64,000 bases of DNA from the IMG/VR virus record IMGVR_UViG_3300042386_001233, positions 1-64,000 of that record. One strand, given 5' to 3'. A model generated the notes under the pieces. That model ran no database searches. It was not told the origin of the DNA and saw nothing but the letters and a program-made list of their open reading frames with translations. This document shows positions 1,890 to 49,228 of this stretch, in pieces. A program made the position numbers and the translations under genes. Every line of letters begins with the position of its first letter. The stretch's first letter is position 1.

Positions 1890-2021
1890 AACTTCTCTAG
1901 TTATAATGAAACTTCTAGGAATAAGATAGCTAGGCTAAACTCTGATGGATCTCTGGACGCAAACTTTATAATTTCAGCATCTGCAAGTTCTGGCCCTGCG
2001 CAAAGGATCATATTATTATAA
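3..2021 (+). CDS. Delta-60 repeat (DUF5122-like) beta-propeller protein, 5'-truncated; probable fibre/adhesin
   Basis: The frame is open from nt 3 (IAIQSDDKIICGG...), upstream of the TTG at 87 used by the track. There are 13 copies of the xAIQSDGKIIxGG...RLNxDGSLDxSF repeat. Confidence 0.88.
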   Translation: MAIQSDDKIICGGTFTSYNGTTRNRIIRLNVDGSLDSSFNVGTGFNINVNAIAIQSDGKIICGGTFTSYNGTTINRIIRLNVDGSLDSSFNVGIGFSSTVNSIAIQSDGKIICGGTFTSYNGTTRNRIVRLNSDGSLDSTFSVGSGFNAGTVNSIAIQSDGKIICGGTFTSYNGTTRNRIVRLNSDGSLDSTFSVGSGFNTGTVNSIAIQSDDKIICGGTFTSYNGTTRNRIIRLNVDGSLDSSFNVGIGFSSTVNSIAIQSDGKIICGGGFGSYNGTMLRRVVRLNSDGNLDLTFFPGPDFGLSNTVNRIVIQSDGKIIFGGTFTSFSFGYYYGIYSINSYGIRNYYYSHVEISSVYALVRQVDGKIVCGGSFESYNIGLSTAYVFGIVRFNSDGIVDSSFNAGSGLDINNGGQILSLAIQSDGKIICAGGFSTFNGISREDIVRLNPDGSVDSSFNCLLSSVLSTIYKVVIQSDGKIIIGGNFTKCVARLNNDGTIDSFFNVGSGFNEVVNDIAIQSDGKIICVGSFTSYNGTTRNNIIRLNVDGSLDSSFNVGTGFNDSVNTIAIQSDGKIMCGGFFSSYNGVARNRIIRLNVDGSLDSSFNVGTGFNDSVNTIAIQSDGKIMCGGNFSSYNETSRNKIARLNSDGSLDANFIISASASSGPAQRIILL

Positions 2022-28700: not shown

Positions 28701-31700
28701 ATTACAACACAGCTTACAGATGCTGGAATAGATCCTGAACGAGCAGCAGCTATAGTTAGAAAAAGAACAGAAGCCAATAATAAAGCACAATCTGATCTTG
28801 CTTTGGAAAGAGGAACAAGAAGAGCGGAAGCTAAAGAGAGACTAGATGCTGAATATAGAAAAGAAGTTGAAGGAGTTACAGATCCTAAAGAAACAGCAAA
28901 AATAAAGGCTAGATTCCAAGAACAATTAAATAAAGAAGCTTCTTTGATTGATGTCGATATTAACGACAAGACGTCAGCAAATAAAGCCGGTATAACAGTT
29001 CAAGAGCTGAAACAACAAAGAGCAGCAGAAGCTCAAGCCAAAGATAAAGCAGAGTCTGATAAACTAATACAAGAGTTTGATTCTACTCTAGGATCAAGTA
29101 AGCCAACAACTATTGATAATCTTCCTATGGGAGAACCTCTTGATTTAGGTGTGGACCCGCTTGCGCCAATAACATCTGCCAAAGATAATGCTGCTACTAC
29201 GGCAGCTAGTACAAAACCAGTCGATGCTGCAACAGTAGCAGCAAAAAACCAGACAGTAGTCAAGGCAGCAGAACAAGAAAATACATCTTCGCTACAAACA
29301 TCAGCGATACCGCAGCCCAAACCCTATAATCCTACAGATTATCCTATTATGGATAGTATTATGAGAGGAGGAAAGAACGGCCATTATGGTCCGATGGGTA
29401 CTACTAATATAACAGGTAAACAAAATATTCATGGAATAAGCGGATGGAAAACTAGACTCATACCAAAAGACGACGCGTCTGCAGCAAAAATTAAAGAATT
29501 TTTAGATACTCATCCAGATATAGGGGAATATAAGTTAGCATTAAATGAGGGACCAGTACCAGTATTTAGTGTCTATTTCAAAAAGGGCACCAAAGATGAA
29601 GCACTATCTTTTGCACAAGCTAGTGAAAAAGGACTAAAAGATAGTTTAGATCCTCGTTTATATCAGGGTGCTGATACTCTGCTAGAAGGGACAAATATTT
29701 CCGCAAGATTTGATGCTAGAGATCTAAAGTATGAATCAGCATCATCAATTATAGATAGACAACTAGAGAATTCTCCTTTTAGTAGAGGATTTTTAAAAGC
29801 TGAAGAACTGAATCTACAAATACCTGCATCAAATACGGCAGCTGGGTCAACGGCTAGCAGAGCAATGCCAAGCATTACTGCTGGCACCAGAGGAGTACCA
29901 GATACTGGGTATGTTGATTGGTTAAAAACAAAAAAGTTTTTGGCGAAAGATCCTAAAAAGATAGCTAGTCTAGATGCAGAGATACAAAGAGCTACTAACG
30001 TAGCAGATGATTGGCTAAAAGAAAATATGTCAGACCTCTACAGCTCATCTGCTGAACGAACAACTAGAGAATCAACTACTCAAACCGGTGGGGTAAAACC
30101 ACAACAACAAGCAGTAGTTGAAACAGCAATCAGAGATGCCACAAGCACACCAACCAAATCCGGTTTTGTTCGAGACAAATCGTTATCGACAGACAAAGTA
30201 GATGATCTAGCTTCTGCCGGATTTGGAGTTATAAGTCCAGACCAAGAAGTAGAAAGTGTTATAAGAGGAGCAAGAGAAAATTCTCTTGGCGTTTTAACTA
30301 AACCAGCAGCGTTATTACAGCCAGAAACATACCAAAAATATGCAGACCAACTATTAGAACTAGAAAAATCAGGAAAAATAAAAATAACCAAAGGCGCTTC
30401 ATTTGGTACTAGTGGCCAACCAAGTATATTTGTAGGAAAACCAGAAAATGTAGATACTCTTGCAAAAGCTTTTGAATCTGAAACAGCAAGAACACGAGAA
30501 ATGGGGGTTCCAGCATCAGATGAATTTCACGAAACGGTAGGAAAGGCACTAGGATATAGTAAAGATAGTAGAGAACTATTTAGATTAAGAAAAGATTGGG
30601 ATAAAGCAGGATTAGATATAGATACTATTCAAGATAGATTACAAACTAGCCGTGGTGCTGCTGCTAGATATATGGTATCAGAAATTAATAAGGCCAAAGA
30701 ACAAGCATCAGTCGAGCAAGGAGTAAAAGAATCAACAAACCCGCCCATCAAACCTCCTATTGATGGAGATGAATTTGAATTAGGAAACTTGGGAGATGAA
30801 ACCCCAGAAGAAAAGGCTCGACTAGACGCACTATATCCTCCGGGTTCTGAGGGATTTTTGGGCCCAATAAAGCCAGATAATGTATTACCTGAAGCAAGAG
30901 CAGAATCACAAGCTCGCACAGTCGAAACCAAACCATCCTCTTTTGAACAAAATCCAGAAGACTTTACAAAGCTTATTGATGAAACTCTTTCTCCATTCCC
31001 AGAAGACTTTTTCCCAGATGGTTCTTCAAAACCAAATGCTAGAGTAGAAGCAGAAATTGATAGTAATACAGTAAACGCTTCTTCTCCAGAAGCTTTAAAA
31101 GCCTCTGCAGAAGCTCAACAAAAACTAGCAGCACAAAAATTAGCAGCAAAATCTCCAGAACAAATATCTGTAGAAAAAACATATGGTCCTTTATATAGAG
31201 AAGCTAAAAAAGCCAACGATACAGCAGAGATGGCCAGAATACGATCAGAAGCTAATGCAGAATTTAAGAAACGCTCTCAAGAAGCTTCAACCAGAGCTGA
31301 AGATAAAAAGAATAGTTTCCTTCCTGTTATGGGTAAGGTCTTAAAGATAGCTGCCCCCATTGGAACTGCTATAGGTTATGGATTAGGATCATTATTAACC
31401 AGGGATAAGAGAAAAGAAGAACCTCAAGATCCAGCCTCTAAACTAAAAAATGCCTCTAGTTTACAGGAAGTCTACGATTTAATAAGCGCAAACGATAGGG
31501 GAACAAAAGGCTTTAGCGCAGTAGAAATTGCCATGAAGCTTAGAGAAATAGACCCTAAAGCATATGACAAGAGCGGTGATGAGTATGTTAATCTAGGAGA
31601 ATTGGCAGGAATGCCAGATAGTGCATATGATGCATACTTAGACAGATTGAAAGACAGGGCAGCAACAGCAAAACCCGTCAACTATCCAGATGTTCCATCT

Positions 31701-33068
31701 TTAGACAAAGATAAAAATATTAAACCATCTTTTGGCGCATATATACCATCTCTAGAGAGTACAATGGCTCCTCAACAGTATGGGGCCGGAGTTTATCAGG
31801 GTCCGTCATCCATGCCCACATTTGATTTAACAAAAACTAAGACCGATGCTGCAGCAATGCCAGAAGTTAATGTCAAAGATAATAATGCTGCTCCGATGCC
31901 AGGAACTAAGAAACCAGTAAAGAAAGCTCTCGGGGGTTTAATCTATGCTTCTGAAGGAATGAAGATTCCTAGACCTAATACAATACTATCTAGTTCACAA
32001 TCTAATAGTGGACTATATGATAGATATGCCTCTTCAGTATCACAACCAATAGATATTGGCAAGTCTTCAGAAAATTCTTTTTCAAGATATATAAAATCTG
32101 GTGGTAGAAGAATGTCTGACAACGTCGAGGTTAGACCCAAATTAACAACAGATGAAGTACTACAGTATTTTGAAAACAAAGAAGCAAAAGAACGTCGTGA
32201 AGGTGCTCCTCCTGCTGGCGGTAGGGTTCAATATGCAACTGGTGGAATAGTATACGCAAATAATGGAGCACTAATAAATGCCCAACCAATGGGAACTGAC
32301 ACTGTTCCAGCAATGTTAACTCCTGGCGAGTTTGTTGTCAAAAAAGAACAAGCTCAAAAACACGCTCCAATACTACATGCTATAAATAGTGGAGCATATA
32401 GTAGGGGTGGTATTGTTAATTATTTGGCTAATGGTGGTGTTGTTAATCCAAACTATTTATCGTATGGCGGTTATCCCGACATGGGAGATTTACAAAATCG
32501 TCGCAATCCTTTAAAGGAGATGAGTCAGAGAGTAGCCGAATATAATGCTTCTATGGCTCCTCAACCAGTACCAATGCCCGCTCCAGCACCGGTTCAAGCA
32601 CCCTCTCCAGCACCAGCGGGTGGTGTATCTAGTAATGTTGGTATAGATGTAGCTAATTTACAGTCCATAGTAACTAATTTGCAGAAAACGGTCAATGACT
32701 TTGGAGCATCGATACCTTCACTTTCACAAGTGGCAGAAAGTATGAATACTGGTTTTAGTTCTTTCGTAACAGGAGGATCCCAAATAGGACAAATGTTAAA
32801 TAGCGCTACAGCGGGTCTACAACAAGTTAATCTTCCTGATAGGATTAGACTAGAAGGTTCAGTAAGCAATAACGTAAATATTAACGGTGCTGAAGCAGCC
32901 GCTAGAGTTATGGATACTATGGGTGGGGCTATTCAACAGGGAGCAAATGAACAAATAGGCAGATTCGCAGGAGCTATTAATCGAGGTATTGGTAATTTGG
33001 GTGAAGGAGCATTAGGTCCAGATACTGGTCAAATTATGGGTCAAATAGGTGGTTCAAATTATGTTTAA
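13704..33068 (+). CDS. Giant tape measure protein (6454 aa) with TP901-type core and many inserted domains
   Basis: N-terminal TMP core (LQQVTG..VSVTLAQAG..AVAAAFAVEADDL..TIATGLRTIFTRIQ); repeated AxGG and DTVPAMLTPGEFVV TMP motifs; long helical segments; position after tube and chaperone genes. Confidence 0.9.
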   Translation: MATAFNLTAQLNLRGPNNVNKIVGDIKKQLSGITANVNLKLDPNVAKNVKALDASLKSLNSTLSRTSTTATSAASAISSFGRAVNSVSIKNIPSQINATVSSMNKLNKSSGTIGQSLNEAATEMQEFGKQAGLAIRRFAAFTAVTGVIYSLTNSINQGIQAFIEYDKELVRLQQVTGQTAGGLKQLQNSISQLATGLGVSSKELTTVSVTLAQAGLSAKDTERALRALALSSLAPSFDDMNETVEGSIALMRQFGISAGQLEQALGSVNAVAAAFAVEADDLITAIQRTGGVFATASKGVSEGTDALNEFISVFTSVRATTRESAETIATGLRTIFTRIQRGSTIDALKEFGVTLTDSEGKFVGAYRAVQLLSEGLSKLDPRDIKFSRIVEELGGFRQIGKVIPLIQQFSVAQNALKIAQTGQSSLAKDAATAQLSLANQIQKVREEFFALFREIGQSKGFQSLLTGVLTLTRGLIKLADVSKSLLPALSVVLAFKGASALTQFASGFSKGFRPGGGKPEKERPRFADGGRVRRFATGGVVPGSGDRDTVPAMLTPGEFVVRKQAVKSIGTAHLHRINKRAKGGPITVEKLKDINPNAVQPDYRNTEEAKNKVGEKDQTWSTYRDQGRRGKVRSTAVKYMQPRDEVYGDVEYVPIPDPNRSEVEKYFGKIVLKKGIKSINPKDKRISTAYENYAQDKVKTIGARYSGDYDPLDFETGDVKFYSSEENIQKYVSINKVLSKRLRHQNKDNRIKWQPNSPEQKELEPTTIYHPTDLTENNNLKKRISDWILLSQNQRTTQAIREGDSFSFGGLVQKFAEGGEAARIRRVGIIDSDVLRDKINAEKVAQGMESIGSDSIQDYTIQLAKLGVQKRKSGDLKKFRVIAGAAGSGKSSLATGVSANDNATLRKTIRSHIITPQDLDSVDEILTITANVSDAKLEGYLRDADRTYTVSSSTKAEQDLIKRNKESRDITGQGLYGREPGKTKGVPADFGVEEATLIDQLGSKNVVLGRKEDAEGNLTNRFRRKREDELPEIVQAEGFYTGGFAPPTRGHRGAFDTLLANVIAKNPKATLKDILVSVAPNVAMVEGKEGLEHAARYGIFDADFRSLLADVNFKGAMISQDAQSTPGILPKVMEVPSENNRRKFARLKGAMAITSGKEQGVLGKYERAGIEVTDIPRIEDISATKVRELLFSQNYTELDKIVNPEVGAILKGNQPQLKNRSVMVPVLLEELHKAAEANTVLANQKADDILANAPGGPYANVSKKLKTEHPDIAAQVKSIREQRDQFKKSISGAKAHSIISELAAAYPEIYGIDPSRRAATAAASISAEDARSHLGDRVKSLVSGRGAATPEPSLLESIKQNVTKQLAIPKGSGTLPTDSKTITSAFLNTKIPSDPTFGMFSGKTIDPGIVKKVWRQTYPGLSEDKTASYIALKEWLEAQYNTRTGAKTEKLSQAIQESKMVGLVGMLPIGHEKLSGPFTWMLGKNAAGEDVSVTASIIERGLGKQYEEEIKKAQSHAEQGSELLASGLASKMKKRPESLRSLDKAQLETLGQGNIEGAYVEQALARLWANLDNVSTRTRPIDYPDGLGESAELFPGISPTMPTEVKRTINSDSRSDAIEEFQRYFRLIHAIPEPKAKKEAVKALASGGEVQRFMAGGVATKTRKPKEVFGTGETAFPSRISKKYAEEQHSASESLRAKLSWDKYPKDERIMVNEDKVQEAYQQPFDRDRFTSSFKEKISRDSLFERMSDFAKFIGLPQEDLSLALPLQLDFGASSRGGGLGMFSAAEFGKGASGIRPYEGYDLSKFGYGEKEKQESYGLEKLIAAKEKEIKKIRKTPTETFDDGSFSFDSEAFQKTYIELDNLKNRFFRLKDLKREAEKAALAEQNTISSATGRGTIGFAPSMGYASTTQNHSLYHEMTHQLFEGLRTRSAESFTKYRDRVSSLFSGDNDDLADAFDSLTAVTAGGGYTSADVVYGRSYKSNNLSQILSSYYRQNLDSSRGTTPIPEDITKNLASLSTQSTAAKRAREYRPINPQVNEALLQGGAKFGMTQEKINRMEDNGKEEFLTTLIEKAPQLDQNLQGILDSTLTELLSGAGIQRQKYASGGKASRRVDFEAGVGQSPFGGSVSKRLSQSIYNLQKNTGLSDSEFNEIKKTADTYGYNEEEFKEYLAKRIQEKKNKEGLRTNPSALAQQLMPQTRVSTPRQLALAQALKDTSNDIGYRPSTLETIAQARTDVGNATRYAVGGIAKVGKKEDKQYGQISITEDAGMINVGYQKGDNRQGYATGYKMRNNLYYVGLSKATKGYGPRLYDVLMEAVTEKGAMLTSDRSSVSEDAKRVWEYYFKNRGDVKKTPLKPSDWTVNSNLIDPKLYGKKETWPPATDPAWTLQTGYSKSPKLITNTNEVIRKRSGGRLSFETGGTVPALVSNGEAYIPPKIAKRIGYSNLNRMNQADRNGMSKFSSGGISVFKGPGTGTSDSIPANLPVGSFILREKATKALGFNKGGAVPAQRFATGGGVTSMIMEWLSSDMTARTKPKMAPRPDVVNRASVVASNDTTKALDILVKSLNQLGLSAANSADILNKGGQVSYKTIQKALAEDIKRLKISGASIQSIVAAETTLANIRKKSKEEVTKQKNIQGLTSARGNSSTKIVGGQTIGDLQAGSGAGQQAIETQAQMLAAARIRRRGGKVTEKQRSEIMESSYIDSASRITGIKKKEFKAAGISGGDIQKYIAESMKDRKSLAQMDKQLIALKTNELTNSAAYIAASNAEQKRMLTEVQQATKEEISTRRKIINDLAAQNGTKGVGAAGLRDTRNSPILNQIKGFIKSPGKVMGGISAAAGLTAGASDMIAKNIYNMSTTEGQGKAAKTSAAIQSSGTILSTGMAAASQMAAIPVIGPYVAALTAVGTAAAAAADYFYDFTGAQKAATVEFERSVRAKEIGIAMDGLDRAFQNFEKDMGNITLQKALEQAIGNTSSLQIKDNMAERDNAKAEFSLKNRSWSDIFSGNFKGSAQMDALEQGAMDSEMSQKLSPISDKAMALYDKQISSGKSIEDIVNNVRTGNKDAVNAGAAVAFNANPKLWSELEQKVKASGDASEANVLKIKRGIVARELLTNAELQAAVKRSKLERDMEASNRAGRRLAETFDHISETIDQSIQRMQRESEIRQAQANDRVEARRGNAGFDERAVNNRNVGVLTNPKAYQNDPRRIEEAIRAGSSGMSPELAQKMAGGARLEATLPNVMRNAISTELKSNASLGLDEAADAARRKGTEAIRNSGLSEADQKVAIDKLNARIEDEKKKVQDNEKGTPAEQVDSFTDSISDLGPEIANIFGNAGKKLDDIIQARQGIYDTFAKNLQAASEAAKKAREFFSKARDIRYDAGMDLREAQTGVGESFSEAKAKSDSSIARLTGGVTDPQAIGRNIDALMARRDQQMKDRDAALSNPNLTQDQQKDAATKFAKDIQATNNALNDNREALDKLANSAEVAQKALDEVKNIRGLQQDRENFVNQLLTNTPEEADKLNQTFIRLQRNLSGGLNNASNQRDARNAFNDTLRRTGNLREATRAGNTVLADQRKQTLQLMQDPGFRGMMTLNMKNQGMNDQQIDKRFRDQEGMLMQQMAIESGLINNPMVRQALAAKQDPNADPAMKRAADQFLQATGLQAKASEEQGRLELANVQNLLVTATDELRMSIDTLTTTINGSLGKDGERVPGVAGPVVPVPAGARGVARPPRPMATGGKVKTQYASTGQLIDFSPKGTDTVPAMLTPGEFVVNARSTAKHLPLLKAINSGAGVDATSNMSKGGVVYLDNGGLIDEFRKIDANKSNFLEVGEIDLKMIQLLDRDKDNKVSFGEYSSRVKSDGSSGSSRSGSGSSVKSGFKAQDMSFEQYYNNRAQKYAKRYQGTGDEVPRDTDKFANGGMVTPYYLAEGTNRPLSRPVMVALPPKKDPIETARAARKQGVPTKRRPSLVPGDPRAKDAEPSFFRLDLNEDGILDRKEGYPYQDLDKDKDGNITQEEWKNNVLARAKVRKLENTIKIIEKEIAEGKPVPVNFEAMKRTLGFAKIDAGMAAAPGDNKAFIARQKRIDDNMNKRLLGGGSINNPDGSYVFNRELNKIYDRRSAFEEERRAQRAKDENATDEEIFDRTVEAYGAGDSNYWRNSMGVTELPNVYDNSRTLDVIRNESDLSSKGDPNGEKTRAYIDGYIQSQGARQQADRVARGIGAEIDSPDIAVTGTQGPVDNLNYLIDQKEKGRVAEKAARDENFKQENKNREGADARQAKLDQRDKELGIDTSGINRDIYESGGGFSNQPGSGRKVTIEEQKQRKREKAIAARFSFTDKTGKYSTTGTIDKVDFEKGTVRIAKIDPKTGEPITRTVPVFADGQTEEEIKASGRDPERFKVGEKEEQVYTTVPLDKLSDQSRDKARSHGLEKEADKAKAGENFSIGEATGKKRTISGKIFRVDEKAGTAVVQRDSGKLVTIPLEKLAPESRNIALDQAKTATTVTDLTQKQMDADVGNIDVTSSLPEPPIPLAEDFTDRANEVRQETMNNAALEQTKMDQLPMMSEPVPTSGTIDPITGKVVGNNVSMDLNPDGTRTPEQLNILSQQATRDADRRNSNARYEELRGRSKAEDAYDRSWLGENWPKEWGGVQKPKRRLTTKELEELGAMESERGVPALSRLGANTRAEQTRRSAGLDEAQIESLSQQKTEQFKAELEKKNDAEGGVAVGLAAQRAVVPLLAGATAIAAAPALVPAGIIGAGLTIAGGVTASLGANKLQDMALEGTDFDKRQRELAEKRPGATAVGSLLPGLLTGNPLTGATTMGRALATRAASGATEAALGAGIRGATSGGDFGTYEDFRNDFLSGVILPTSNFGSKGSRNYSRPEGPAKPTSLKDVAATVRDEQLAIREENVLAGNERIATKRKQDEVRKAAQAEQRIKDEVEAVKESGREKAVFDFMKPLITRPDKSNSPIVKGVADMVLNHHRDLMARVKSKDILEKGRGLNDEQITTQLTDAGIDPERAAAIVRKRTEANNKAQSDLALERGTRRAEAKERLDAEYRKEVEGVTDPKETAKIKARFQEQLNKEASLIDVDINDKTSANKAGITVQELKQQRAAEAQAKDKAESDKLIQEFDSTLGSSKPTTIDNLPMGEPLDLGVDPLAPITSAKDNAATTAASTKPVDAATVAAKNQTVVKAAEQENTSSLQTSAIPQPKPYNPTDYPIMDSIMRGGKNGHYGPMGTTNITGKQNIHGISGWKTRLIPKDDASAAKIKEFLDTHPDIGEYKLALNEGPVPVFSVYFKKGTKDEALSFAQASEKGLKDSLDPRLYQGADTLLEGTNISARFDARDLKYESASSIIDRQLENSPFSRGFLKAEELNLQIPASNTAAGSTASRAMPSITAGTRGVPDTGYVDWLKTKKFLAKDPKKIASLDAEIQRATNVADDWLKENMSDLYSSSAERTTRESTTQTGGVKPQQQAVVETAIRDATSTPTKSGFVRDKSLSTDKVDDLASAGFGVISPDQEVESVIRGARENSLGVLTKPAALLQPETYQKYADQLLELEKSGKIKITKGASFGTSGQPSIFVGKPENVDTLAKAFESETARTREMGVPASDEFHETVGKALGYSKDSRELFRLRKDWDKAGLDIDTIQDRLQTSRGAAARYMVSEINKAKEQASVEQGVKESTNPPIKPPIDGDEFELGNLGDETPEEKARLDALYPPGSEGFLGPIKPDNVLPEARAESQARTVETKPSSFEQNPEDFTKLIDETLSPFPEDFFPDGSSKPNARVEAEIDSNTVNASSPEALKASAEAQQKLAAQKLAAKSPEQISVEKTYGPLYREAKKANDTAEMARIRSEANAEFKKRSQEASTRAEDKKNSFLPVMGKVLKIAAPIGTAIGYGLGSLLTRDKRKEEPQDPASKLKNASSLQEVYDLISANDRGTKGFSAVEIAMKLREIDPKAYDKSGDEYVNLGELAGMPDSAYDAYLDRLKDRAATAKPVNYPDVPSLDKDKNIKPSFGAYIPSLESTMAPQQYGAGVYQGPSSMPTFDLTKTKTDAAAMPEVNVKDNNAAPMPGTKKPVKKALGGLIYASEGMKIPRPNTILSSSQSNSGLYDRYASSVSQPIDIGKSSENSFSRYIKSGGRRMSDNVEVRPKLTTDEVLQYFENKEAKERREGAPPAGGRVQYATGGIVYANNGALINAQPMGTDTVPAMLTPGEFVVKKEQAQKHAPILHAINSGAYSRGGIVNYLANGGVVNPNYLSYGGYPDMGDLQNRRNPLKEMSQRVAEYNASMAPQPVPMPAPAPVQAPSPAPAGGVSSNVGIDVANLQSIVTNLQKTVNDFGASIPSLSQVAESMNTGFSSFVTGGSQIGQMLNSATAGLQQVNLPDRIRLEGSVSNNVNINGAEAAARVMDTMGGAIQQGANEQIGRFAGAINRGIGNLGEGALGPDTGQIMGQIGGSNYV

Positions 33069-40629: not shown

Positions 40630-41829
40630 ATGATTATAAATAGCCAATTTTTTATTACATACTACATCGGCCAAGAACCTCTGCCGCTTAAAACCATACC
40701 AGCGTCTTTGGCTCCTAATAGTATCGGACGCATAGAGTACGACACTTTTATGCAGGCCATAGACACTATTTATGGAAGTCAGACTCTTGATGGTTCTATA
40801 CCTAAATTTTGGACAAGAAGAACCCAGGCTGTTGATATACTAGGAAATATTAAATACTTTTATGAGCCACACCCAGATTCTACATTATCACAATTAGATA
40901 GTAAGTCATCTTATTATTTTATTGTTAGAGACACTACAGCAATTCCTGTGAGAGTTCCTTCTATTGGTGGGCTGTTATTAGGATTTACAGACGCTAATAA
41001 GCTACCCAACGTACTAGCAGAAAGCATACCAAATACTAAACTCTCTGATGATAGTAAATACTCATTCTCTCCAAGGATTGAAAATTTACAGCCTTATGAA
41101 GAATATAAATATGAGTTTAAAACAGTTAATGCAAATTGGCCGGTAAGCATTAGCACAATATCCGGTATAATCAAACCGTCAACAGATAAAATTTCAATTC
41201 AAAGTAATGTTGGTTTTTGTCCCAGTACTGGCAATTGTGACACTAATGTTATGCCCTTTTCATTACCAGAAGTGTGTGCTCTTTCTAGTTCTGACAATAA
41301 GAGCATCACAATGCAGCTATCAGTAGTTCCACTGTCCTATGTCGGCATGGAGGTATTAAGTAATCAGTTTACTGTTGAATGTCAAGACTGTTTACCCAAA
41401 CCGTTCATAGCAATTTCTGGGAAATCTCCCTCTTTGGTGCTAGAGCCTGTAGCAGACGATGCCGAGCCCGCATCATATTCTTTTGAATTGATTACTAAGA
41501 ATTTAGAATTAGACAAAGAATATTCTTATAGTATTGAAGTATTAAGATCAGAGTGGCCTTTTGTATTTACCAATCCAACATCTGGCAATATTACGGTAAA
41601 ATCATCAACAGATAAGCCTCTATTAGATGGTAAAATGTTTTTCTGTCCAGCAACAGGGCTATGTCCACCAAATACAAATGGTGTCCTCCCCTATACTGTT
41701 CCATCATATCCAAAGTTTTTAACTGGAGCAGCAACCTATAGTGTTACTCTAAGGGCTGTATTAGATTCTTCTGAGTGCGACACAGAAACTGTGTATAGTT
41801 TACCCATCACCATATCTTATAAAAATTAA
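40630..41829 (+). CDS. Cys/NWP-repeat protein 1 (2 modules)
   Basis: 399 aa; modules with xWP..SG, FCPxxGxC and CxDCLP. Confidence 0.7.
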   Translation: MIINSQFFITYYIGQEPLPLKTIPASLAPNSIGRIEYDTFMQAIDTIYGSQTLDGSIPKFWTRRTQAVDILGNIKYFYEPHPDSTLSQLDSKSSYYFIVRDTTAIPVRVPSIGGLLLGFTDANKLPNVLAESIPNTKLSDDSKYSFSPRIENLQPYEEYKYEFKTVNANWPVSISTISGIIKPSTDKISIQSNVGFCPSTGNCDTNVMPFSLPEVCALSSSDNKSITMQLSVVPLSYVGMEVLSNQFTVECQDCLPKPFIAISGKSPSLVLEPVADDAEPASYSFELITKNLELDKEYSYSIEVLRSEWPFVFTNPTSGNITVKSSTDKPLLDGKMFFCPATGLCPPNTNGVLPYTVPSYPKFLTGAATYSVTLRAVLDSSECDTETVYSLPITISYKN

Positions 41830-41835
41830 ATTATC

Positions 41836-43125
41836 ATGAGTACAGAAAATTATCCATCAAACGATCCCAGACTTGAGAGTTTAGCTGATACTAACCCGTC
41901 TCCTTCGGTACCGCCAACACCAACTGAAAATCATATCAGAGACGTTGCTCTTTCAGTAAAGGGATTAATTAAAAGATTGGAATATAAATATGTTGTAGAG
42001 AGTCTTGGGGCCAACTGGCCCGTAGCTATTGTTCCTGTGTCCGGATCTTTTGTAGCAGAGTCGAAGACAGAAACACTTAATGTCAAAGCTATTTTTTGTC
42101 CCAACTTTATTTTATGTCCATCTGGTAGTGCTGATGTTCTTCCATATAATCGTAATTATAGTTATGGAGTAGAAAATAAATTATTATTCACAACTATCAG
42201 GCTTAAAGTTTCAGAGCTAGATTCAAATACTGACTTTATATACGGTACCCCAGTAGCTTTGTCATGTGCTAATTGTCTGCCTGAAGTTGGTCCCAAAATA
42301 ACATTACCTGATAGTATAACCCTTGATAATAAAACCCAAAACAGTATTATGGTTAGTGGACTAGCTAGTGGCATATCTCCAGACACCCGGTATTCTTATC
42401 GTTATAAAGTATTAGACGCAACATGGCCAGTTTCGCTTTATCCTTTAAGTGGAACTATTAAGAGCGCCACAGAAACAGTATCTGTACCAAGTCAATTAGT
42501 GTTTTGTGAAACATCAGGAAATTATCAAACTGACATGTGTGGAACTCCTAAAGAAAAGAGAGCAACACTAAGCTTAGAACTAACACCATTAGCAGCAGAT
42601 ACTGAAACAGTATCGATTCTATCTGTTAATAGTAGTAAAATTATTAGTAACGATATGATTGCGAATTGTGATGATTGTATTCCGTATCCAGAATTACAAA
42701 TATCAGCCTCACCATTAAATACTAGTAAATCTGATAGAATTAGTATTAGCGGATCCATAAAAAATCTGAAAGTAAACCATCTATATAACTATAGTTTAGA
42801 AAATATTGATTCTAATTGGCCATTATATGTCGGATCCAGATCAGGAACAATAACACCAACATCGCCTGAAGATATATCTCTGAGTTTTGTCGGAGAATTT
42901 TGCAAAACGCCAGCTCTTTGTCCTTCTGGATCATCGGCTGTAATACCATATTCTACAGTTGTTAATGGTACTAACGCCTATACGTCATTTAAGCTTAAGC
43001 TGGTTGACCCGGCGATTACAGGCTCCTATTATAGTAATAACATTAGGGTCTACTGTAGCGACTGCTCTCAGAGTTTTATGCCTGTTTTAGTATCATCCCA
43101 GGTTTCAGATAACCCCACTTGTTAA
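41836..43125 (+). CDS. Cys/NWP-repeat protein 2 (3 modules)
   Basis: 429 aa; xWP at 42013, 42421 and 42814. Confidence 0.7.
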   Translation: MSTENYPSNDPRLESLADTNPSPSVPPTPTENHIRDVALSVKGLIKRLEYKYVVESLGANWPVAIVPVSGSFVAESKTETLNVKAIFCPNFILCPSGSADVLPYNRNYSYGVENKLLFTTIRLKVSELDSNTDFIYGTPVALSCANCLPEVGPKITLPDSITLDNKTQNSIMVSGLASGISPDTRYSYRYKVLDATWPVSLYPLSGTIKSATETVSVPSQLVFCETSGNYQTDMCGTPKEKRATLSLELTPLAADTETVSILSVNSSKIISNDMIANCDDCIPYPELQISASPLNTSKSDRISISGSIKNLKVNHLYNYSLENIDSNWPLYVGSRSGTITPTSPEDISLSFVGEFCKTPALCPSGSSAVIPYSTVVNGTNAYTSFKLKLVDPAITGSYYSNNIRVYCSDCSQSFMPVLVSSQVSDNPTC

Positions 43126-43138
43126 TAAGGTATAATAA

Positions 43139-45454
43139 ATGTCAAATGTTAAAAGCATAGGAATTAAAGTTAGTGGATTAAGTCCACTAGATACATATAA
43201 TTATACATTTTCAAATAAGGGAGGAAATTGGCCAGTTAAACTATCTCCATTATCTGGATCTTTCAAGTCCAATTCTATAGGCAACGTATATGAGATTAGA
43301 TCATATGTAGAATTTTGTGCAACAACGGGGCTATGTCCTCCGGGAGCAACTAACGTTTTATACAATGCTCCATATATTGATAGTAATGCTGGTGCCTCTG
43401 TAGACAGAACAACACTGTATTCTGTAATAGGCTTATCTCTAGTATCAGCAGCAACGTCTGAAAAAGTCTTAGATACTCAAGCACTAATAGAGTGCGAAAA
43501 TTGCTTACCAAACATCTCTCTAACAGCAGAAGAAAATATCGTGTTAGATGAGTCATCATTAAATACCAGACAAATAGCTACAGCAGTCAATGGTTTGATT
43601 CCCAACCAATCTTATACATATGTCTTTACATCAATCGATAGTAATTGGCCAGTAAAAGTAACTCCAGTTTCTGGCACTATTCGCTCATCAGCCGATTCTG
43701 CTAATATTAAGAGTCTAGTAACTCTTTGTGCCAATTCTGGAGATTGTGCTAATGGATTGTTTTTTGTTCCAACACAAAATTGTGATGCTGGTCAGAGCCC
43801 GTTCTCAGCTATCAAGCTTACAGTATCTCCAGTAAATAGTAGCCTACAAGAGCCCGTATCCGCTGATTTTACCGTATCTTGTGATAATTGTATTCCTAAA
43901 TTATCATTAATTTTACCATCTACCGTTAAACTTGATAGATTATCTAAGAATAAAACTTCTATAAATTTAGTAGCATCCAATCTTAAGCTTGGAAAACAAT
44001 ATGTTTATCATATTAATAGTGTAGATGCTAATTGGCCAGCTATTGTTACCCCCATTAGTGGTAAGCTAACTGCACATTATGATAGTATGAACATCCCACT
44101 GACTGTTACATTATGTCCATCAACAGGACTATGCCCATCAGCCAGCAGCGACGTAATAGACTATAGTATAGACAGTAACTGCTTATTAGGCTATTCAAAT
44201 ATGGAGAGGTATGTTAGATTTAATGCTGATATTTCTGGAAATGAGTGTGATAGCGGATACGACAAAACCTATAGCAATGATGTAACGGTATCTTGTGTTG
44301 ATTGTTTGCCAAGAGCCAAAGTCTCTATTCCAAGCATAATGCTCTTATCTTCTGAGGATAAAAACGTAAATACCTTTACTTCTGATATAACCGATCTAGC
44401 TCCTGGACAAAAATATGAATATTCATTTAAATCAGTAGATAGTAACTGGCCCACACTGGTATATCCTATAACTGGTATTATTAGCACAGAATCAACATCA
44501 ATATCATTATCATCTAGAATAACATTTTGCAGATCAACGGGTCTATGTGAGAATGCTGAAAATCTTTTAGATTATACCTTTGATAATAGCAGTTTATATA
44601 GTGAGGGTCTTGAGAGATATTCTTCCATCGTTTTAGAGATTAAACCAGTAGACTGTTCATCTATACCGGTTTCTACAAGCAATACCATGCTAGTTAGATG
44701 TGACGGCTGTTTGCCAGTAGCATCTCTAACTCACTCATCCAATAGTGCTATTCTCTCTAGTCCAGGAATAAACAGATTCCAACTATCAACATCTGCTCAA
44801 AACCTAATTCCCGGAGAAACTTATTCATACGGAGTTAACTATGTTGATAGTAACTGGCCAACAATTGTGTCTAAACAATCTGGTGAATTTGTAGCTGTAT
44901 CTTCTAATAAAAATATCTTAACTGAATTGCAGTTCTGTTTTCCTAGCGGTACTTGTTCTCAAAATCCTGTTGATGTGATGCCATATAGAGTTAGTCCGAT
45001 TACTGCTAATACTAATAAATATGCTGTTATTAATCTTTCTATTACTGACACTACTAGCTCAAGTAGTCCTACTATTAGCGATGACTTCACACTAACCTGT
45101 TCAAATTGCCTACCAAATATTAATTACACTATGGCATTTTCTGGCAGTCCAACATTAGTACTACCAAGCAATTGTTGTTCTGGTAATCAAGTTATGAGAG
45201 TAAATATTGGCGGAGCTATTGCTGGAGATATTCATAATTATGTTCTATCTTCATCTTCTCCAAACGTATCATTCATGCCAACCAGCGGACAGATAATTTT
45301 CAAACAAGGCGGTTCTGGTACTATTGTTAGCATGATGAGCACATCACTAAGTAGTGAAACATCAGCAATAGCACAATGCAAGTTAACTAATGTTAGTTCT
45401 AATATTGAGACTGTAGACTTTTTGGTTATCAAATGCGGAACGAATGCCTGCTAA
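43139..45454 (+). CDS. Cys/NWP-repeat protein 3 (5 modules plus a degenerate sixth)
   Basis: 771 aa; NWP at 43226, 43643, 44030, 44444 and 44852. Confidence 0.7.
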   Translation: MSNVKSIGIKVSGLSPLDTYNYTFSNKGGNWPVKLSPLSGSFKSNSIGNVYEIRSYVEFCATTGLCPPGATNVLYNAPYIDSNAGASVDRTTLYSVIGLSLVSAATSEKVLDTQALIECENCLPNISLTAEENIVLDESSLNTRQIATAVNGLIPNQSYTYVFTSIDSNWPVKVTPVSGTIRSSADSANIKSLVTLCANSGDCANGLFFVPTQNCDAGQSPFSAIKLTVSPVNSSLQEPVSADFTVSCDNCIPKLSLILPSTVKLDRLSKNKTSINLVASNLKLGKQYVYHINSVDANWPAIVTPISGKLTAHYDSMNIPLTVTLCPSTGLCPSASSDVIDYSIDSNCLLGYSNMERYVRFNADISGNECDSGYDKTYSNDVTVSCVDCLPRAKVSIPSIMLLSSEDKNVNTFTSDITDLAPGQKYEYSFKSVDSNWPTLVYPITGIISTESTSISLSSRITFCRSTGLCENAENLLDYTFDNSSLYSEGLERYSSIVLEIKPVDCSSIPVSTSNTMLVRCDGCLPVASLTHSSNSAILSSPGINRFQLSTSAQNLIPGETYSYGVNYVDSNWPTIVSKQSGEFVAVSSNKNILTELQFCFPSGTCSQNPVDVMPYRVSPITANTNKYAVINLSITDTTSSSSPTISDDFTLTCSNCLPNINYTMAFSGSPTLVLPSNCCSGNQVMRVNIGGAIAGDIHNYVLSSSSPNVSFMPTSGQIIFKQGGSGTIVSMMSTSLSSETSAIAQCKLTNVSSNIETVDFLVIKCGTNAC

Positions 45455-45481
45455 TTATATAGACACAAGAGGATTTTGATA

Positions 45482-48400
45482 ATGCTAGATATTATAGGAT
45501 TAAATTCCGCAAACTATAACAATTGTATAGAATGGAGATATATCCCAGGAGATTTAACTACTGTTGGATATAACGGAGGTCCAAGTCAATACAATACATA
45601 TGATCAGTCTGGTAATATCTGGGAGTGGACAGAAGAGTTTGATACTATCAGTGTTGGCGGAAACGATTACTATTATAGAAGAATTCGAGGAGGTTCTTTT
45701 AGGGATAGTGCTCAAACTTTATCTTCTTTGTATACTCATTCAAGACATATTCCCGGTAGTGCCGAAGCAGACAATAATCTTGTTATTAAGGATAATATTG
45801 GTTTTAGGTTGATTTCTAGTGGAAATCCTTTATCTCTACAGCATTTTGTTAATGTTGGAGATATCAACAATTCTCCTCTGGTATTGACCGGAGATTATGC
45901 TGGTTCATATGGTTCTGTTAATTACGAGTATTTAATAAATCAAATACCTGTAACTAATGATGATTATGTAGTTTTTTTAAATACTGTTGATTCTAATGGG
46001 ACTAGGATTCAACTAAGCGAAACCTTCAATGCCTCTGGTCAATCTACTGCAAATAATCAAAATGTATTATATCATTTTTATATGTCTTCTGATCAAAGAG
46101 GTGGCATAGAGTTTAATAGTGGTGAAGTTGTTGGTAGAAAATATAAATCTAAAAGTAATATGGGCAATAAGCCTGTAAATTTTATTACTTGGTATATGGC
46201 TGCAAGTTATTGCAACTGGCTACATAACAAGGTTTCTGATCCAGATACTACCACAACTAATACGGGGGCTTATGACTTATCGTTAGATGATAATCTTATA
46301 GTTCGCGCTAATGATAGTTATTATAGCTTGCCGTCGGACAATGAATGGTTCAAAGCCGCTTATTACAAGGGCGGTTCATCAGATGCCGGTTATTGGACTT
46401 ATGCAACAAGGTCAGATTCTGATCCAACATGTATTGATGTTGACGAAAACGGAATAGGCCCATGGCAAAAATCTCAAGATTATGTTAGTATACCATTAAA
46501 TAATTTGGTTATCGGTAATAGTTATACTGTTAATTTCGAAATATCAAAAACATCACCGTATTCTGTAGATCTAGATAAGAATAGCTATTCTTTCATCGCT
46601 TCTGCTCCTACTGAGAGTGTTGTTGTTTGTGTCACTAAATATTTAATAGTAGATTTTGCTATTATAATATACTCATTAACAAATAATAATTCTGGACTAC
46701 TTGAATCTGTTGATTCTGTAGTTTTACAATGCTCTTCTAGAAATTCTTGTAAACTTACTCGCACCCCAACTCCTACTAAAACTGTTACTCCAACACCAGC
46801 AGCTAGTCAGAGTCCTACTCCAACAATAACTCCTACTCCGTCGAGAACTCCAACAATAACGCCAACAATTACAGTTACCTCAACTGCTACTCCAACAGTT
46901 ACTCGAACAGTAACGCCCACCCCGTCTCTTACAGCTTCTGAAACTGCTACTCCGACAGCCACAAGAACATCCACTCCCACGCCAACACCAACAATTACTG
47001 TAACAAGAACAGTAACCCCAACCATAACAGTAACTAGAAGCGAAACACCAACTCCAACAGTAACTAAAACAACAACACCAACTCCAACAGTAACTAAAAC
47101 AACAACACCAACCCCAGCAGCTAGTCAAACACCAACGCCAACTGTTACTCCAACAATAACAGCATCTAGAACCCCAACCACTACAGCTACTCCAACCATT
47201 ACCATTACTCCTAGTATTACTATAACTAGAAGCGAAACACCGACTCCAACAGTTACTAGAACAAATACTAGAACTCCAACAGTAACACCATCAGTAACAG
47301 CTTCATTAACTCCAACTATAACAGTAACTAAAACAACAACACCAACAGTTACTCCAACAGTCACCCCTACTCCATCAAGACCATTTGCTTTTGTCAGCAC
47401 ATGGAATACATTAAGTACTAGTACTGGTAGTAGTACGACTAGTCGAATTAAACTACCATTAATATTAGGTGGTACTTATAACTTTATTGTTAACTGGGGA
47501 GATGGAAATAGTAATAATATAACATCTTGGAACCAATCCGAGGTGACTCATACGTATGCTAGTACTGGTATTAAAACCATAACTATTACTGGAACTATCA
47601 AAGGATGGGAATTTAATAATAGTGGAGATAGATTAAAGATTACTAATATTAGCAATTGGGGTCCGTTGGATATGAATGTGACTGGCAGTTCCAGAAACTT
47701 TAATGGTTGTGCTAATTTAAATATTACTACTGGAGGATCTCCAGTTATGCCAACCAATTGTACTGGTATGTTTGAGGGTTGTAGTGCTCTTGTTGGAGTT
47801 GGCATTAACGATTTTAATATGGCGACCGTAACCAATACTTCATATATGTTCTCTTCTTGTTCGCTTTTTAATGCTCCAATTAATAATTGGAATACTAGTA
47901 GCGTAACTAATATGAGTGGCATGTTCTTTGAAGCTATTAGCTTTAATCAGCAAATAGGAACTTGGAATACTAGTAGAGTTACTAATATGAGCAGCATGTT
48001 TAATGGGGCTTCAGGTTTTAATCAGCCATTAAATACTTGGAATACTTCAGCAGTAACTAATATGAGTAGCATGTTTACTAGTACAGGGCAGTATAATCAA
48101 AGCATGAGCAGTTGGGACACCAGCAAGGTTACTAATATGAGTAGCATGTTTCTCAATGCTTTATCTTTTAATCAAGATATTAGTATGTGGAATATATCAT
48201 TAGTGGTATCTATGAATGATATGTTAAGAGGTACCAGTTTTAATCAAACCAACTACCATGCTTTACTTACTTCTTGGGGTAGTAGTACTACCCCCACTCA
48301 AAACAATGTTACTCTTGCTGTTGATCAAGAATATTCTTCAATAAATGCTACAATAGTAAGTAGAAGACTATATTTAATAAATACTAAGGGTTGGAATATT

Positions 48401-49228
48401 ATTGATTATGGTAATGAAACTAGTATGATAGTTAGATATAATAGTACAAATATTACTTGGCAGGTTAATAACGGTTGGCAATGGACGAATGAATTATACT
48501 CTATATTAAAACCACAAAATGATACCATAGTAGAAGTTAACTGGGGAAATGGACAAAATTTTGTATATAATTCGAGTAATGCTATATTAGCAGGAGTCTA
48601 TTCTCCTACTTATGCTGCTAGTACTACATATACCATTAGAATAACAAAAAGGAGTGGTACTGGACTTATTGAACTTGGCCCTTCTGCAAATCATACTGCC
48701 GGTCAGACGTATGGTATGCCACAATATTATACTCCATTTCAAAATAGCGTAACTGCCATAGATAGATTTGGTAGTAATATTAAACTTAGATCTGGAGAAA
48801 ATCACTTCGCCTATTATAATAATCTGGTTTCTGTTTCTAGTACGGACGCACCTATTAATCCATCAGATAATTCCTACCGTAATATCTTTCTTAACTGTTC
48901 AAACTTTGTTGGAACTGGTTTGAACAATTGGAATACTAGCTCTATAACTAATATGTTTGGTGCATTTCAGAATAATTCTAGTTTCACTTTTGATTTGAGA
49001 AACTGGAATTTATCTAATGTTACAGATATGGGTCAGATGCTGTTGAACGCTACTAGTTTTGGTACCGGCAACTACAGTTTTCTGTTGCAGCACTTAAATG
49101 ACAATAATACTAAAAATAATGTTCCTTTAAGAAGTAGTTCTAGATATTTTAATCAAGCCAGCGTAACTTCTGCAAGAGCGTCTTTGGTGGCAAGAGGATG
49201 GACTATTATCGATTTAGGAGCAATATAA
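45482..49228 (+). CDS. Adhesin-like protein: permuted FGE/CLec domain, Thr/Pro linker, PKD-like domain, BspA/DUF285 repeats
   Basis: Start preferred at ATG 45482 (GAGGA upstream; the track starts at TTG 45476). Repeats WNTSxVTNMSxMF..FNQ; VNWGDG PKD-like motif. Confidence 0.8.
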   Translation: MLDIIGLNSANYNNCIEWRYIPGDLTTVGYNGGPSQYNTYDQSGNIWEWTEEFDTISVGGNDYYYRRIRGGSFRDSAQTLSSLYTHSRHIPGSAEADNNLVIKDNIGFRLISSGNPLSLQHFVNVGDINNSPLVLTGDYAGSYGSVNYEYLINQIPVTNDDYVVFLNTVDSNGTRIQLSETFNASGQSTANNQNVLYHFYMSSDQRGGIEFNSGEVVGRKYKSKSNMGNKPVNFITWYMAASYCNWLHNKVSDPDTTTTNTGAYDLSLDDNLIVRANDSYYSLPSDNEWFKAAYYKGGSSDAGYWTYATRSDSDPTCIDVDENGIGPWQKSQDYVSIPLNNLVIGNSYTVNFEISKTSPYSVDLDKNSYSFIASAPTESVVVCVTKYLIVDFAIIIYSLTNNNSGLLESVDSVVLQCSSRNSCKLTRTPTPTKTVTPTPAASQSPTPTITPTPSRTPTITPTITVTSTATPTVTRTVTPTPSLTASETATPTATRTSTPTPTPTITVTRTVTPTITVTRSETPTPTVTKTTTPTPTVTKTTTPTPAASQTPTPTVTPTITASRTPTTTATPTITITPSITITRSETPTPTVTRTNTRTPTVTPSVTASLTPTITVTKTTTPTVTPTVTPTPSRPFAFVSTWNTLSTSTGSSTTSRIKLPLILGGTYNFIVNWGDGNSNNITSWNQSEVTHTYASTGIKTITITGTIKGWEFNNSGDRLKITNISNWGPLDMNVTGSSRNFNGCANLNITTGGSPVMPTNCTGMFEGCSALVGVGINDFNMATVTNTSYMFSSCSLFNAPINNWNTSSVTNMSGMFFEAISFNQQIGTWNTSRVTNMSSMFNGASGFNQPLNTWNTSAVTNMSSMFTSTGQYNQSMSSWDTSKVTNMSSMFLNALSFNQDISMWNISLVVSMNDMLRGTSFNQTNYHALLTSWGSSTTPTQNNVTLAVDQEYSSINATIVSRRLYLINTKGWNIIDYGNETSMIVRYNSTNITWQVNNGWQWTNELYSILKPQNDTIVEVNWGNGQNFVYNSSNAILAGVYSPTYAASTTYTIRITKRSGTGLIELGPSANHTAGQTYGMPQYYTPFQNSVTAIDRFGSNIKLRSGENHFAYYNNLVSVSSTDAPINPSDNSYRNIFLNCSNFVGTGLNNWNTSSITNMFGAFQNNSSFTFDLRNWNLSNVTDMGQMLLNATSFGTGNYSFLLQHLNDNNTKNNVPLRSSSRYFNQASVTSARASLVARGWTIIDLGAI
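46760..47375 (+). repeat. Thr/Pro-rich low-complexity coding repeat including an exact 30-nt tandem duplication
   Basis: TPTxTxT units; ACACCAACTCCAACAGTAACTAAAACAACA at 47045-47074 and 47075-47104. Confidence 0.9.

What the first reader, a model, noticed from the sequence alone, without database searches (positions are those of the whole stretch)
40630..45454. Unfamiliar ~125-aa Cys/NWP repeat family amplified 2+3+5 times over three genes
Ten modules plus a degenerate one share the pattern L..G..Y.Y.....D.NWP..V.P.SG...FC...G.C...(P)Y...L.....SN...V.C..C(L/I)P. xWP occurs at 41134, 41551, 42013, 42421, 42814, 43226, 43643, 44030, 44444 and 44852. Usually four Cys occur per module; the CxxCLP marks the junction. 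It looks like an Ig-like chain stapled by disulfides or metal, which is unusual for proteins folding in a bacterial cytoplasm. I do not recognise the family. The block has its own GGTGTA motif.
Basis: partly seen in the sequence, partly recalled or inferred. Interest (0 to 1): 0.65.

Follow-up and report, generated by a model that had tools for sequence, protein, structure and literature searches.

The report
Cysteine-stapled Ig-like repeats in phage tail genes
Three neighbouring genes of an uncultured 244-kb lake phage encode ten copies of an unnamed, cysteine-bearing Ig-like module that most likely forms the long stalk of a tail appendage: a new sequence family of a familiar kind of phage part.

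Summary
Genes A (40630-41829), B (41836-43125) and C (43139-45454) hold 2+3+5 modules of 124-146 aa. Gene C's last 112 aa are a degenerate eleventh module (hhalign 95%). No Pfam, NCBIfam or PHROG family fits, and no cultured phage matches by tblastn. A profile search found 450 metagenomic representatives with up to 13 matched stretches per protein.

AlphaFold2 gives a confident chain of Ig-like beta-sandwiches (pLDDT 92). Its structural matches are only generic (best Z 9.9).

The genes lie about 7.5 kb downstream of a 6454-aa tape-measure gene, among proteins with FN3, FGE-sulfatase, DUF285 and propeller domains. In distant relatives the modules are fused to those same domains. In 30 representatives one gene carries A's N-terminal domain, 1-3 modules and C's C-terminal domain. 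A/B/C therefore look like one fibre gene in three pieces.

The four cysteines behave as two independent pairs (Cx5C and CxxC), not an obligate Cys4 site. Whether they form disulfides or bind metal could not be tested, because no model coordinates were available. My verdict is a new member of the known class of phage Ig-like stalk repeats, of moderate interest.

The parts
   Evidence: the number of such sites in the region is not above chance (21 vs 25.9), so it is only a candidate
40630..41010 (+). gene A residues 1-127: conserved non-Ig N-terminal domain (starts MIINSQFF) that begins the chain
   Evidence: AF2 pLDDT 93, mixed strand/helix. No PDB match at Z>=7.
41011..41397 (+). module A1 (NWP 41134; Cx5C; CQDCLP 41380)
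   Evidence: iE 6.7e-36
41398..41826 (+). module A2 (EWP 41551; Cx5C present, CxxC absent; the gene ends where the CxxC would be)
41836..41907 (+). gene B N-terminal extension (24 aa, Pro/Ser/Thr-rich), absent from the three distant B-type genes examined in L004-L006
41908..42282 (+). module B1 (NWP 42013; CANCLP 42265)
42283..42684 (+). module B2 (TWP 42421; second Cys of the first pair displaced; CDDCIP 42667); this module type is triplicated in a 64%-identical orthologue
42685..43065 (+). module B3 (NWP 42814; ends CSDC)
43066..43122 (+). gene B C-terminal tail of 19 aa ending in Cys; 11-19 of 19 residues identical in the thirteen closer B orthologues (44-89% identical over the last module), 17 or more in ten of them
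43139..43510 (+). module C1 (NWP 43226; CENCLP 43493); starts at profile position ~11-17, so it lacks the first two short strands
43511..43897 (+). module C2 (NWP 43643; CDNCIP 43880)
43898..44311 (+). module C3 (NWP 44030; CVDCLP 44294)
44312..44716 (+). module C4 (NWP 44444; CDGCLP 44699)
44717..45115 (+). module C5 (NWP 44852; CSNCLP 45098)
45116..45451 (+). gene C C-terminal domain (112 aa; CC...C pattern): a degenerate, shortened module that ends the chain

Best explanation
Genes A, B and C belong to the tail-tip/appendage gene block of an uncultured 244-kb lake-water phage. Together they encode ten copies, plus one degenerate copy, of an unnamed ~130-aa Ig-like beta-sandwich module. The modules are strung head to tail.

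The chain most likely serves as the extended stalk or spacer of a virion appendage. Gene A's N-terminal domain starts the chain, gene C's C-terminal domain ends it, and the number of modules sets its length. Binding heads (FGE-sulfatase/C-type-lectin-like, DUF285, beta-propeller) are encoded by neighbouring genes here and are fused to the modules in relatives.

The three genes correspond to a single gene in more distant relatives. They are probably pieces of one fibre, though whether they still assemble into one chain is not shown.

Each module carries two independent cysteine pairs at its distal end, beside the junction with the next module. One is a Cx5C just after strand 7. The other is a CxxC at the end of the last strand. 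I infer that these oxidise to local disulfide staples once the virion is released into oxic water.

Shown: the repeats, the fold class, the family's spread, the synteny and the Cys covariation. Inferred: virion location, the stalk role, the disulfide chemistry and the assembly of A, B and C.
For: Repeats and motifs.

Fold: the AF2 di-module has pLDDT 92.3 and pTM 0.80, with nine strands per module. Matches are to Ig-like sandwiches only: PapD-like/ASH/MSP/Calx-beta/MG domains at Z up to 9.9 over about 103 residues covering one module; CfaB pilins and hydin ASH domains; phage BACON/Ig/tail proteins; cadherin-like/DUF11/CARDB clusters.

Context: the 6454-aa ORF at 13704-33068 carries PF10145 PhageMin_Tail (75.8 bits, cut-off 33.2), so it is the tape measure. 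It is followed on the same strand by proteins with FGE-sulfatase, FN3 ('minor tail protein' PHROGs), DUF285 and propeller domains.

Synteny: the A-B-C order is conserved in relatives.

Fusions: distant relatives join the modules to FGE-sulfatase, DUF5122/BNR, LCCL/RCC1 and DUF285 domains.

One-gene forms: 30 representatives carry the N-domain, 1-3 modules and the C-domain in one polypeptide. One of them sits downstream of homologues of the window's FN3, 192-aa and 295-aa genes.

Copy number: the number of profile-matched stretches runs from 1 to 13 per protein. Within close relatives, B has 3 or 5 modules at 64% identity.

Cysteines: four are conserved at about 97%. The first pair is lost together in 53 modules or displaced together. 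The CxxC is never lost singly. A/B/C hold 2.0-3.8% Cys, against 0% in the tape measure and a 1.6% genome mean. The phage is found in 20 lake or freshwater runs.
Against: There is no proteomic or imaging evidence that these proteins are in the virion.

No Dit/Tal/baseplate family was recognised between the tape measure and these genes.

Cys geometry was not measurable. Odd Cys counts occur in about 45% of modules, which shows that free thiols are tolerated. No thiol oxidoreductase is encoded, although none is needed for oxidation outside the cell.

In four long relatives an FGE-sulfatase region precedes the N-domain, so the anchor role and the polarity of the chain are uncertain.

Binding between B and C got no verdict.
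Confidence: 0.6

Rival explanations
1. The cysteines are metal ligands rather than disulfides. Either a structural Zn(Cys)4 site forms at each module junction, or CxxC pairs from two parallel chains share a metal in a zinc-hook-like rung.
For: Four Cys are conserved at about 97% and all lie at the same end of the sandwich: after strand 7 and at the end of strand 9. CxxC is a classic metal knuckle spacing. The proteins are made in a reducing cytoplasm, and the genome encodes no oxidase.
Against: An intramodule Cys4 site predicts loss of all four Cys together. Instead 53 modules keep CxxC without Cx5C, 14 of them with no other Cys. Chain-end modules keep Cx5C without CxxC. The spacing of the first pair is variable. 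The interchain version has no support, and the oligomeric state is unknown.
Confidence: 0.2
2. The proteins are Hoc-like decorations of the capsid or tail tube (weak adhesins), not part of a tail-tip fibre.
For: Tandem Ig-like chains with a special terminal Ig-like anchor domain are typical of Hoc and tentaclins (PMC10743442). BFVD matches include decoration and major tail proteins with Ig domains.
Against: The genes lie downstream of the tape measure, among large proteins rich in putative binding domains, not near capsid genes. TerL is about 190 kb away. Relatives fuse the modules to lectin-like and propeller heads, as in fibres. Position alone does not exclude this rival.
Confidence: 0.15
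3. A, B and C are three independent paralogous appendage proteins that do not join into one chain.
For: The complex prediction gave no verdict. B's tail adds nothing to the module profile score of C1. In three more distant relatives (loci L004-L006) B starts with a truncated module although A offers no tail.
Against: Only A has the N-domain and only C has the C-domain. B has neither, and single-gene forms with both ends exist. B's 19-aa tail is far better conserved than the rest of B.
Confidence: 0.3

Closest known systems
Ig-like domains on tailed-phage structural proteins (T4 Hoc; Big_2, I-set and FN3 decorations; my knowledge of Fraser et al. 2006)
   Same: Tandem Ig-like beta-sandwiches on virion-associated proteins with variable copy number. 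Inferred accessory adhesion or spacer role.
   Different: No sequence membership in FN3, Big_x, I-set or BACON at domain level. The module is longer (~130 aa) with a 25-residue loop. It has two conserved Cys pairs. The repeats are spread over three genes.
Tentaclins (C-type-lectin head plus Ig-like chain plus conserved terminal Ig-like domain; PMC10743442)
   Same: A chain of Ig-like domains with a distinct conserved terminal Ig-like domain. Association with FGE-sulfatase/C-lec-fold domains, in neighbouring genes here and fused in relatives.
   Different: A/B/C carry no C-lec domain themselves. No DGR was looked for or seen. Different habitat (lake versus gut). No sequence relation was tested, and the consensus motifs differ.
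PapD-like / ASH / MSP and Calx-beta / MG Ig-like domains (best structural matches)
   Same: Same general 7-9-strand sandwich; Z 8-9.9, rmsd 2.6-3.2 A over about 100 residues.
   Different: Identity is 8-13% and the scores lie in the range the tool calls common for unrelated models. There is no functional link.
Disulfide-crosslinked phage tails (Agrobacterium phage Milano, PMC10811340; siphovirus tail-tube rings, PMC13576161)
   Same: A precedent for cysteine crosslinks stabilising phage virion parts made in the cytoplasm.
   Different: Those are inter-subunit bonds in the sheath or tube. Here the inferred bonds are local and intramodule, and they are untested.
Pfam PF16656 Pur_ac_phosph_N (FN3-like), the label automated pipelines attach to these proteins
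   Same: About 30 residues around L.P..Y.Y resemble the FN3-like strand pair (profile positions 56-85 of 93). The summed score for gene C is 36.3 bits against a cut-off of 30, and most homologues carry this precomputed label.
   Different: No single stretch passes. Each module alone scores 14.7 bits or less. The motif lies in the early strands 3-4 of the module, whereas it matches the late part of the Pfam profile. So the match is at motif level, not domain membership.

Membership tests
Ig-like (E-set type) beta-sandwich fold class | two-sheet sandwich of 7-9 antiparallel strands, one per repeat | tested here: met
   AF2 pLDDT 92.3 with nine strands per module. Every top structural match is an Ig-like domain spanning model residues 1 to about 126-129, which is one module.
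Pfam FN3 (PF00041) / Pur_ac_phosph_N (PF16656) | a domain-level match above the gathering score covering most of the profile | tested here: not met
   Only profile positions 46-85 of 93 match. No stretch passes on its own. Single modules score 14.7 bits or less against a cut-off of 30.
Any curated family (Pfam-A, NCBIfam, PHROGs) | significant HMM match to the module | tested here: not met
   a PDB sequence profile search gave 0 hits at E<=10
Structural Zn(Cys)4 site (zinc-ribbon-like) | four ligands conserved and lost as one unit | tested here: not met
   Cys patterns in 678 modules: CCCC 576, xxCC 53, CxCC 40 (28 with a displaced Cys), xCCC 9. Fourteen modules have only the CxxC.
Structural Zn(Cys)4 site (zinc-ribbon-like) | tetrahedral geometry of four S atoms; bound metal | not testable with these tools
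   Model coordinates are not returned, and there is no metal assay.
Disulfide-stapled extracellular-type domain | cysteines appear and disappear in pairs | tested here: met
   The first pair is lost jointly (53) or shifted jointly. The CxxC is never lost singly. The C-domain has invariant C21 and C107. Against this, extra Cys at columns 95 and 116 do not co-occur, and odd counts are common.
Disulfide-stapled extracellular-type domain | S-S distance of about 2 A in a structure; oxidised state in virions | not testable with these tools
   No coordinates and no biochemistry.
Phage tail fibre / tail-tip appendage | gene located in the tail module downstream of the tape measure | tested here: met
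   PF10145 lies in the ORF at 13704-33068. A/B/C lie 7.5 kb downstream on the same strand.
Phage tail fibre / tail-tip appendage | presence in the virion, attached to the tail tip | not testable with these tools
   The phage is uncultured and no proteome is available.
Chaperone-usher-like donor-strand complementation between B and C | an incomplete Ig fold completed by a strand from the neighbouring subunit | tested here: inconclusive
   C1 lacks the first two strands, and B has a conserved 19-aa tail of the right length. But the profile score gains nothing and the complex prediction gave no verdict.
Tentaclins | [quoted passage not shown] | not tested
   A/B/C have no C-lec domain. The tentaclin consensus was not available for comparison.

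The most novel reading that the evidence does not exclude
The three genes are a fissioned fibre that reassembles non-covalently head to tail. B's invariant C-terminal tail would supply the missing first strands of C's truncated first module, as in pilus donor-strand complementation. The cysteine pairs at the junctions would act as an oxidation switch: the chain is flexible while reduced in the host cytoplasm and locks into a rigid beaded rod once the virion meets oxic lake water.
Probability: 0.1. Interest if true: 0.65.

Novelty: new member of a known kind. Interest (0 to 1): 0.38.

Why it matters
It defines a sizeable domain family that no curated library names: 450 representatives at 50% clustering. 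Pipelines currently mislabel it as a purple-acid-phosphatase N-terminal domain.

It marks the appendage genes of an uncultured lineage of lake phages that carry giant tape measures.

It gives a clean natural series of stalk-length variants (3 to 12-13 modules) and of split versus unsplit gene forms. Such a series is useful for studying how phage fibres change reach and how repeat proteins tolerate gene fission.

The conserved Cys pairs offer a simple test of whether phages use post-lysis oxidation to stiffen appendages.

Tried and rejected
Complex prediction of B3 plus tail against C1: no verdict. Score 0.39 against a control at 0.43. This is no evidence either way.

Profile test of B's tail as the missing N-terminal strands of C1: 91.8 versus 91.7 bits, with shuffled tails at a mean of 92.5. 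There is no support, but power is low because that part of the profile is weakly conserved.

Searches that returned nothing:
- megablast and tblastn against cultured phages: no match for gene C.
- ESM Atlas feature search for the di-module and for the N-domain: no usable hit.

Thiol-redox enzymes in the genome: Trx, Grx and DsbA are absent. The Erv1 search is uninformative because its control did not ring.

Fold of gene A's N-domain: the VIA list was filled by the adjoining module. All I can say is that no PDB representative reached Z 7 on the N-domain.

Recent-duplication idea: rejected. Modules are 18-33% identical, and DNA repeats are limited to motif patches.

Link to 'moraphages' (PMC12619734): not pursued. 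That lineage is described as having contractile tails and no tape measure identified, and no sequence comparison was possible.

Full report
WHAT IS THERE

The window is the first 64 kb of a 243,821-bp IMG/VR virus record with direct terminal repeats. GC content is about 36%. The same stretch is held, word for word, by 20 lake-water or freshwater metagenome runs.

Cutting at the CxxC[LI]P motif gives ten modules of 124-146 aa. They align with 18-33% pairwise identity. Y35, Y37, W46, P47, G55 and C73 are invariant, and C79, C133, C136 and P138 are nearly so.

A profile built from the modules finds these ten copies in the whole genome (iE 1e-24 to 1e-42) and nothing else. DNA-level similarity is limited to short patches at the motifs, so the copies are old.

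The last 112 residues of C are a shortened, degenerate module. They fail the module HMM but match the module profile by hhalign at 95.2%, E 2.7e-8.

The GGTGTA remark is weak. There is one copy, in the gap before gene A, inside a sigma-70-like site. The hexamer is under-represented in the window.

IS IT A KNOWN FAMILY?

No curated family fits:
- Pfam gives only a motif-level, sub-domain match of the L.P..Y.Y stretch to the FN3-like PF16656. No stretch passes alone, and single modules score 14.7 bits or less.
- PHROGs and NCBIfam give nothing.
- A profile search of PDB sequences gives nothing at E<=10.
- megablast and tblastn against 50,697 cultured-phage records give nothing.

The word-based protein search found 45 clusters, all metagenomic 'hypothetical proteins', with 3-9 modules each. 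An exhaustive profile search of 1.84 billion representatives found 450 proteins at E<=1e-3 and 88 at E<=1e-30, with up to 13 matched stretches per protein. The family is real, sizeable and unnamed.

FOLD

A two-module piece (C residues 125-391) was folded with an alignment of 94 di-modules. The model has pLDDT 92.3 and pTM 0.80, is all-beta and has nine strands per module.

Every fold search returns Ig-like sandwiches and nothing more specific:
- CfaB pilins, hydin/ASH domains, RbmA and Calx-beta (Foldseek PDB).
- Phage BACON/Ig/tail proteins (BFVD).
- PapD-like chaperones, ASH, MSP, Calx-beta and macroglobulin domains at Z up to 9.9, rmsd 2.6-3.2 A, about 103 residues.
- Cadherin-like, DUF11, CARDB and NPCBM_assoc clusters (atlas).

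Single-domain matches span model residues 1 to about 126-129.

The first Cys pair lies just after strand 7: C73, with C79 at the start of a 25-residue loop. The CxxC lies at the end of the last strand. From the strand directions I infer that both pairs lie at the distal end of the module, next to the junction with the following module. The tools return no coordinates, so distances could not be measured.

CONTEXT

The 6454-aa ORF at 13704-33068 carries PF10145 (PhageMin_Tail, 75.8 bits) and is the tape measure. The following proteins are all encoded on the same strand:
- a 1169-aa FGE-sulfatase-domain protein;
- an 830-aa FN3 protein that hits 'minor tail protein' PHROGs;
- two small proteins of 192 and 295 aa;
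- A, B and C;
- a 1250-aa protein with FGE-sulfatase, a Pro/Thr linker and DUF285;
- further large proteins.

A DUF5122 propeller protein lies at the window's start. TerL lies far away, at genome positions 230282-232303, and is only 26% identical to the nearest cultured phage.

The order FGE protein, FN3 protein, ~190 aa, ~300 aa, A, B, C is conserved in relatives whose C protein is only 31-39% identical. This places A/B/C in the tail-tip/appendage block. Their presence in the virion is inferred, not shown.

ARCHITECTURE ACROSS THE FAMILY

Gene A's first ~127 residues are a conserved non-Ig domain. Gene C's C-terminal domain occurs in 108 of them. Thirty representatives carry the N-domain, 1-3 modules and the C-domain in one polypeptide.

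One such 500-aa gene lies downstream of homologues of the window's FN3, 192-aa and 295-aa genes. In the window only A has the N-domain, only C has the C-domain and B has neither. The three genes therefore look like one fibre gene in three pieces. The direction of the change, fission or fusion, was not determined.

More distant relatives fuse the modules to FGE-sulfatase, DUF5122/BNR/sortilin propeller, LCCL/RCC1 and DUF285 domains. These are the same putative binding domains encoded next door in the window. That is the pattern expected of a stalk that carries exchangeable heads.

Copy number is labile:
- In the word-search set, proteins carry 3-9 modules, and gene C's full-length orthologues carry 5 (771 aa) to 9.
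- The profile search found proteins of up to 1705 aa with 12-13 matched stretches.
- A B orthologue that is 64% identical has five modules. The two extra ones are B2-type copies, 52-57% identical to B2.

THE CYSTEINES

In 272 unique modules the four Cys are each present at about 97%. Over the 678 modules that cover all four columns (out of 811 collected), the patterns are:
- all four present: 576;
- CxxC only, with both Cys of the first pair gone: 53, of which 14 have no other Cys at all;
- second Cys of the first pair missing from its column: 40, of which 28 have a Cys displaced a few residues downstream;
- first Cys missing: 9;
- CxxC lost singly: never.

Chain-end modules such as A2 keep Cx5C without CxxC. 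The two pairs are therefore independent units. This argues against an obligate intramodule Cys4 metal site and against cross-pair disulfides. It fits two local staples.

Extra cysteines are frequent, do not co-occur, and give odd totals in about 45% of modules. Free thiols are evidently tolerated.

A, B and C hold 2.0, 3.0 and 3.8% Cys, against a genome mean of 1.6%, 0-1.4% in most of the neighbouring large proteins, and none at all in the 6454-aa tape measure. The genome encodes no recognisable thioredoxin, glutaredoxin or DsbA. The Erv1 search was uninformative.

The phage lives in lake water, and disulfide-crosslinked virion parts are documented in other phages (PMC10811340, PMC13576161). 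The simplest reading is oxidation after release. This is inference, and metal binding remains a live rival.

DO A, B AND C JOIN?

B ends with its CxxC followed by a 19-aa tail. In the thirteen closer orthologues the tail is 11-19 of 19 residues identical, and 17 or more in ten of them, while the rest of the last module is only 44-89% identical. C's first module, and B's first module in three distant relatives, starts at profile position ~11-17. It therefore lacks the first two short strands.

The tail has the length of the missing piece, which suggested strand complementation. Two tests did not bear this out. Adding the tail does not raise the profile score of C1. The complex prediction gave no verdict. 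The idea stays open and is listed only as the novel reading.

VERDICT

The chemistry of the staple is unresolved.

What is there is a new sequence family of a well-known kind of phage part, namely tandem Ig-like stalk repeats of a tail appendage. It has two conserved cysteine pairs per module and an unusual distribution over three genes. Interest is moderate. A structure or a simple redox/metal assay would settle the open point.

Noticed in passing
window 13704-33068 (+): A single 6454-aa ORF with PF10145 PhageMin_Tail at aa 188-382, so a giant tape measure protein. It contains no cysteine at all and has weak EF-hand motif hits. Thermus phage P23-45 has a 5002-aa tape measure and an 800-nm tail (bioRxiv 10.1101/2022.12.01.518664). 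By the same proportion this would predict a tail near 1 micrometre (my extrapolation).
   Followed up: partly
window 45476-49228 (+): A 1250-aa protein combining an N-terminal FGE-sulfatase (C-type-lectin-like) domain, a Pro/Thr-rich linker of roughly 280 aa encoded partly by 30/60-nt tandem repeats (46983-47143), and DUF285 repeats. It is a candidate binding head for the neighbouring stalk. The listed start is TTG; an ATG lies at 45482.
   Followed up: partly
window 87-2021 (+): A 644-aa protein made of eleven DUF5122 beta-propeller repeats (E 1e-156). The same domain is fused to the Cys modules in relative P0149.
   Followed up: partly
window 2798, 7532, 40589; genome-wide: GGTGTA lies 41-46 nt upstream of three start codons (2844, 7575, 40630). 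Genome-wide, 14 of 38 intergenic copies lie 20-70 nt upstream of an ORF start. This may be part of a phage promoter, but the flanks share little and the hexamer is not enriched overall.
   Followed up: partly
G000:C1:230282-232303 (L008:1258-3279): The large terminase is at most 26% identical to any cultured phage (best: Bacillus phage Stills group; also Microcystis phage MaeS), so the phage belongs to an uncultured lineage.
   Followed up: partly
G000:C1 221187-221498, 127483-127989, 67665-68072, 218924-219337 and others: Several small ORFs outside the window have 8-10% cysteine (possible zinc-finger or Cys-rich proteins).
   Followed up: no
L006:6959-8368 (relative's gene A): In one relative, gene A ends in a run of PADP repeats after the second module. 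It is another example of low-complexity linkers at the gene boundaries of this fibre.
   Followed up: no
proteins P0021, P0023-P0025, P0039: Some relatives carry two C-terminal domains in tandem at the end of the chain.
   Followed up: no
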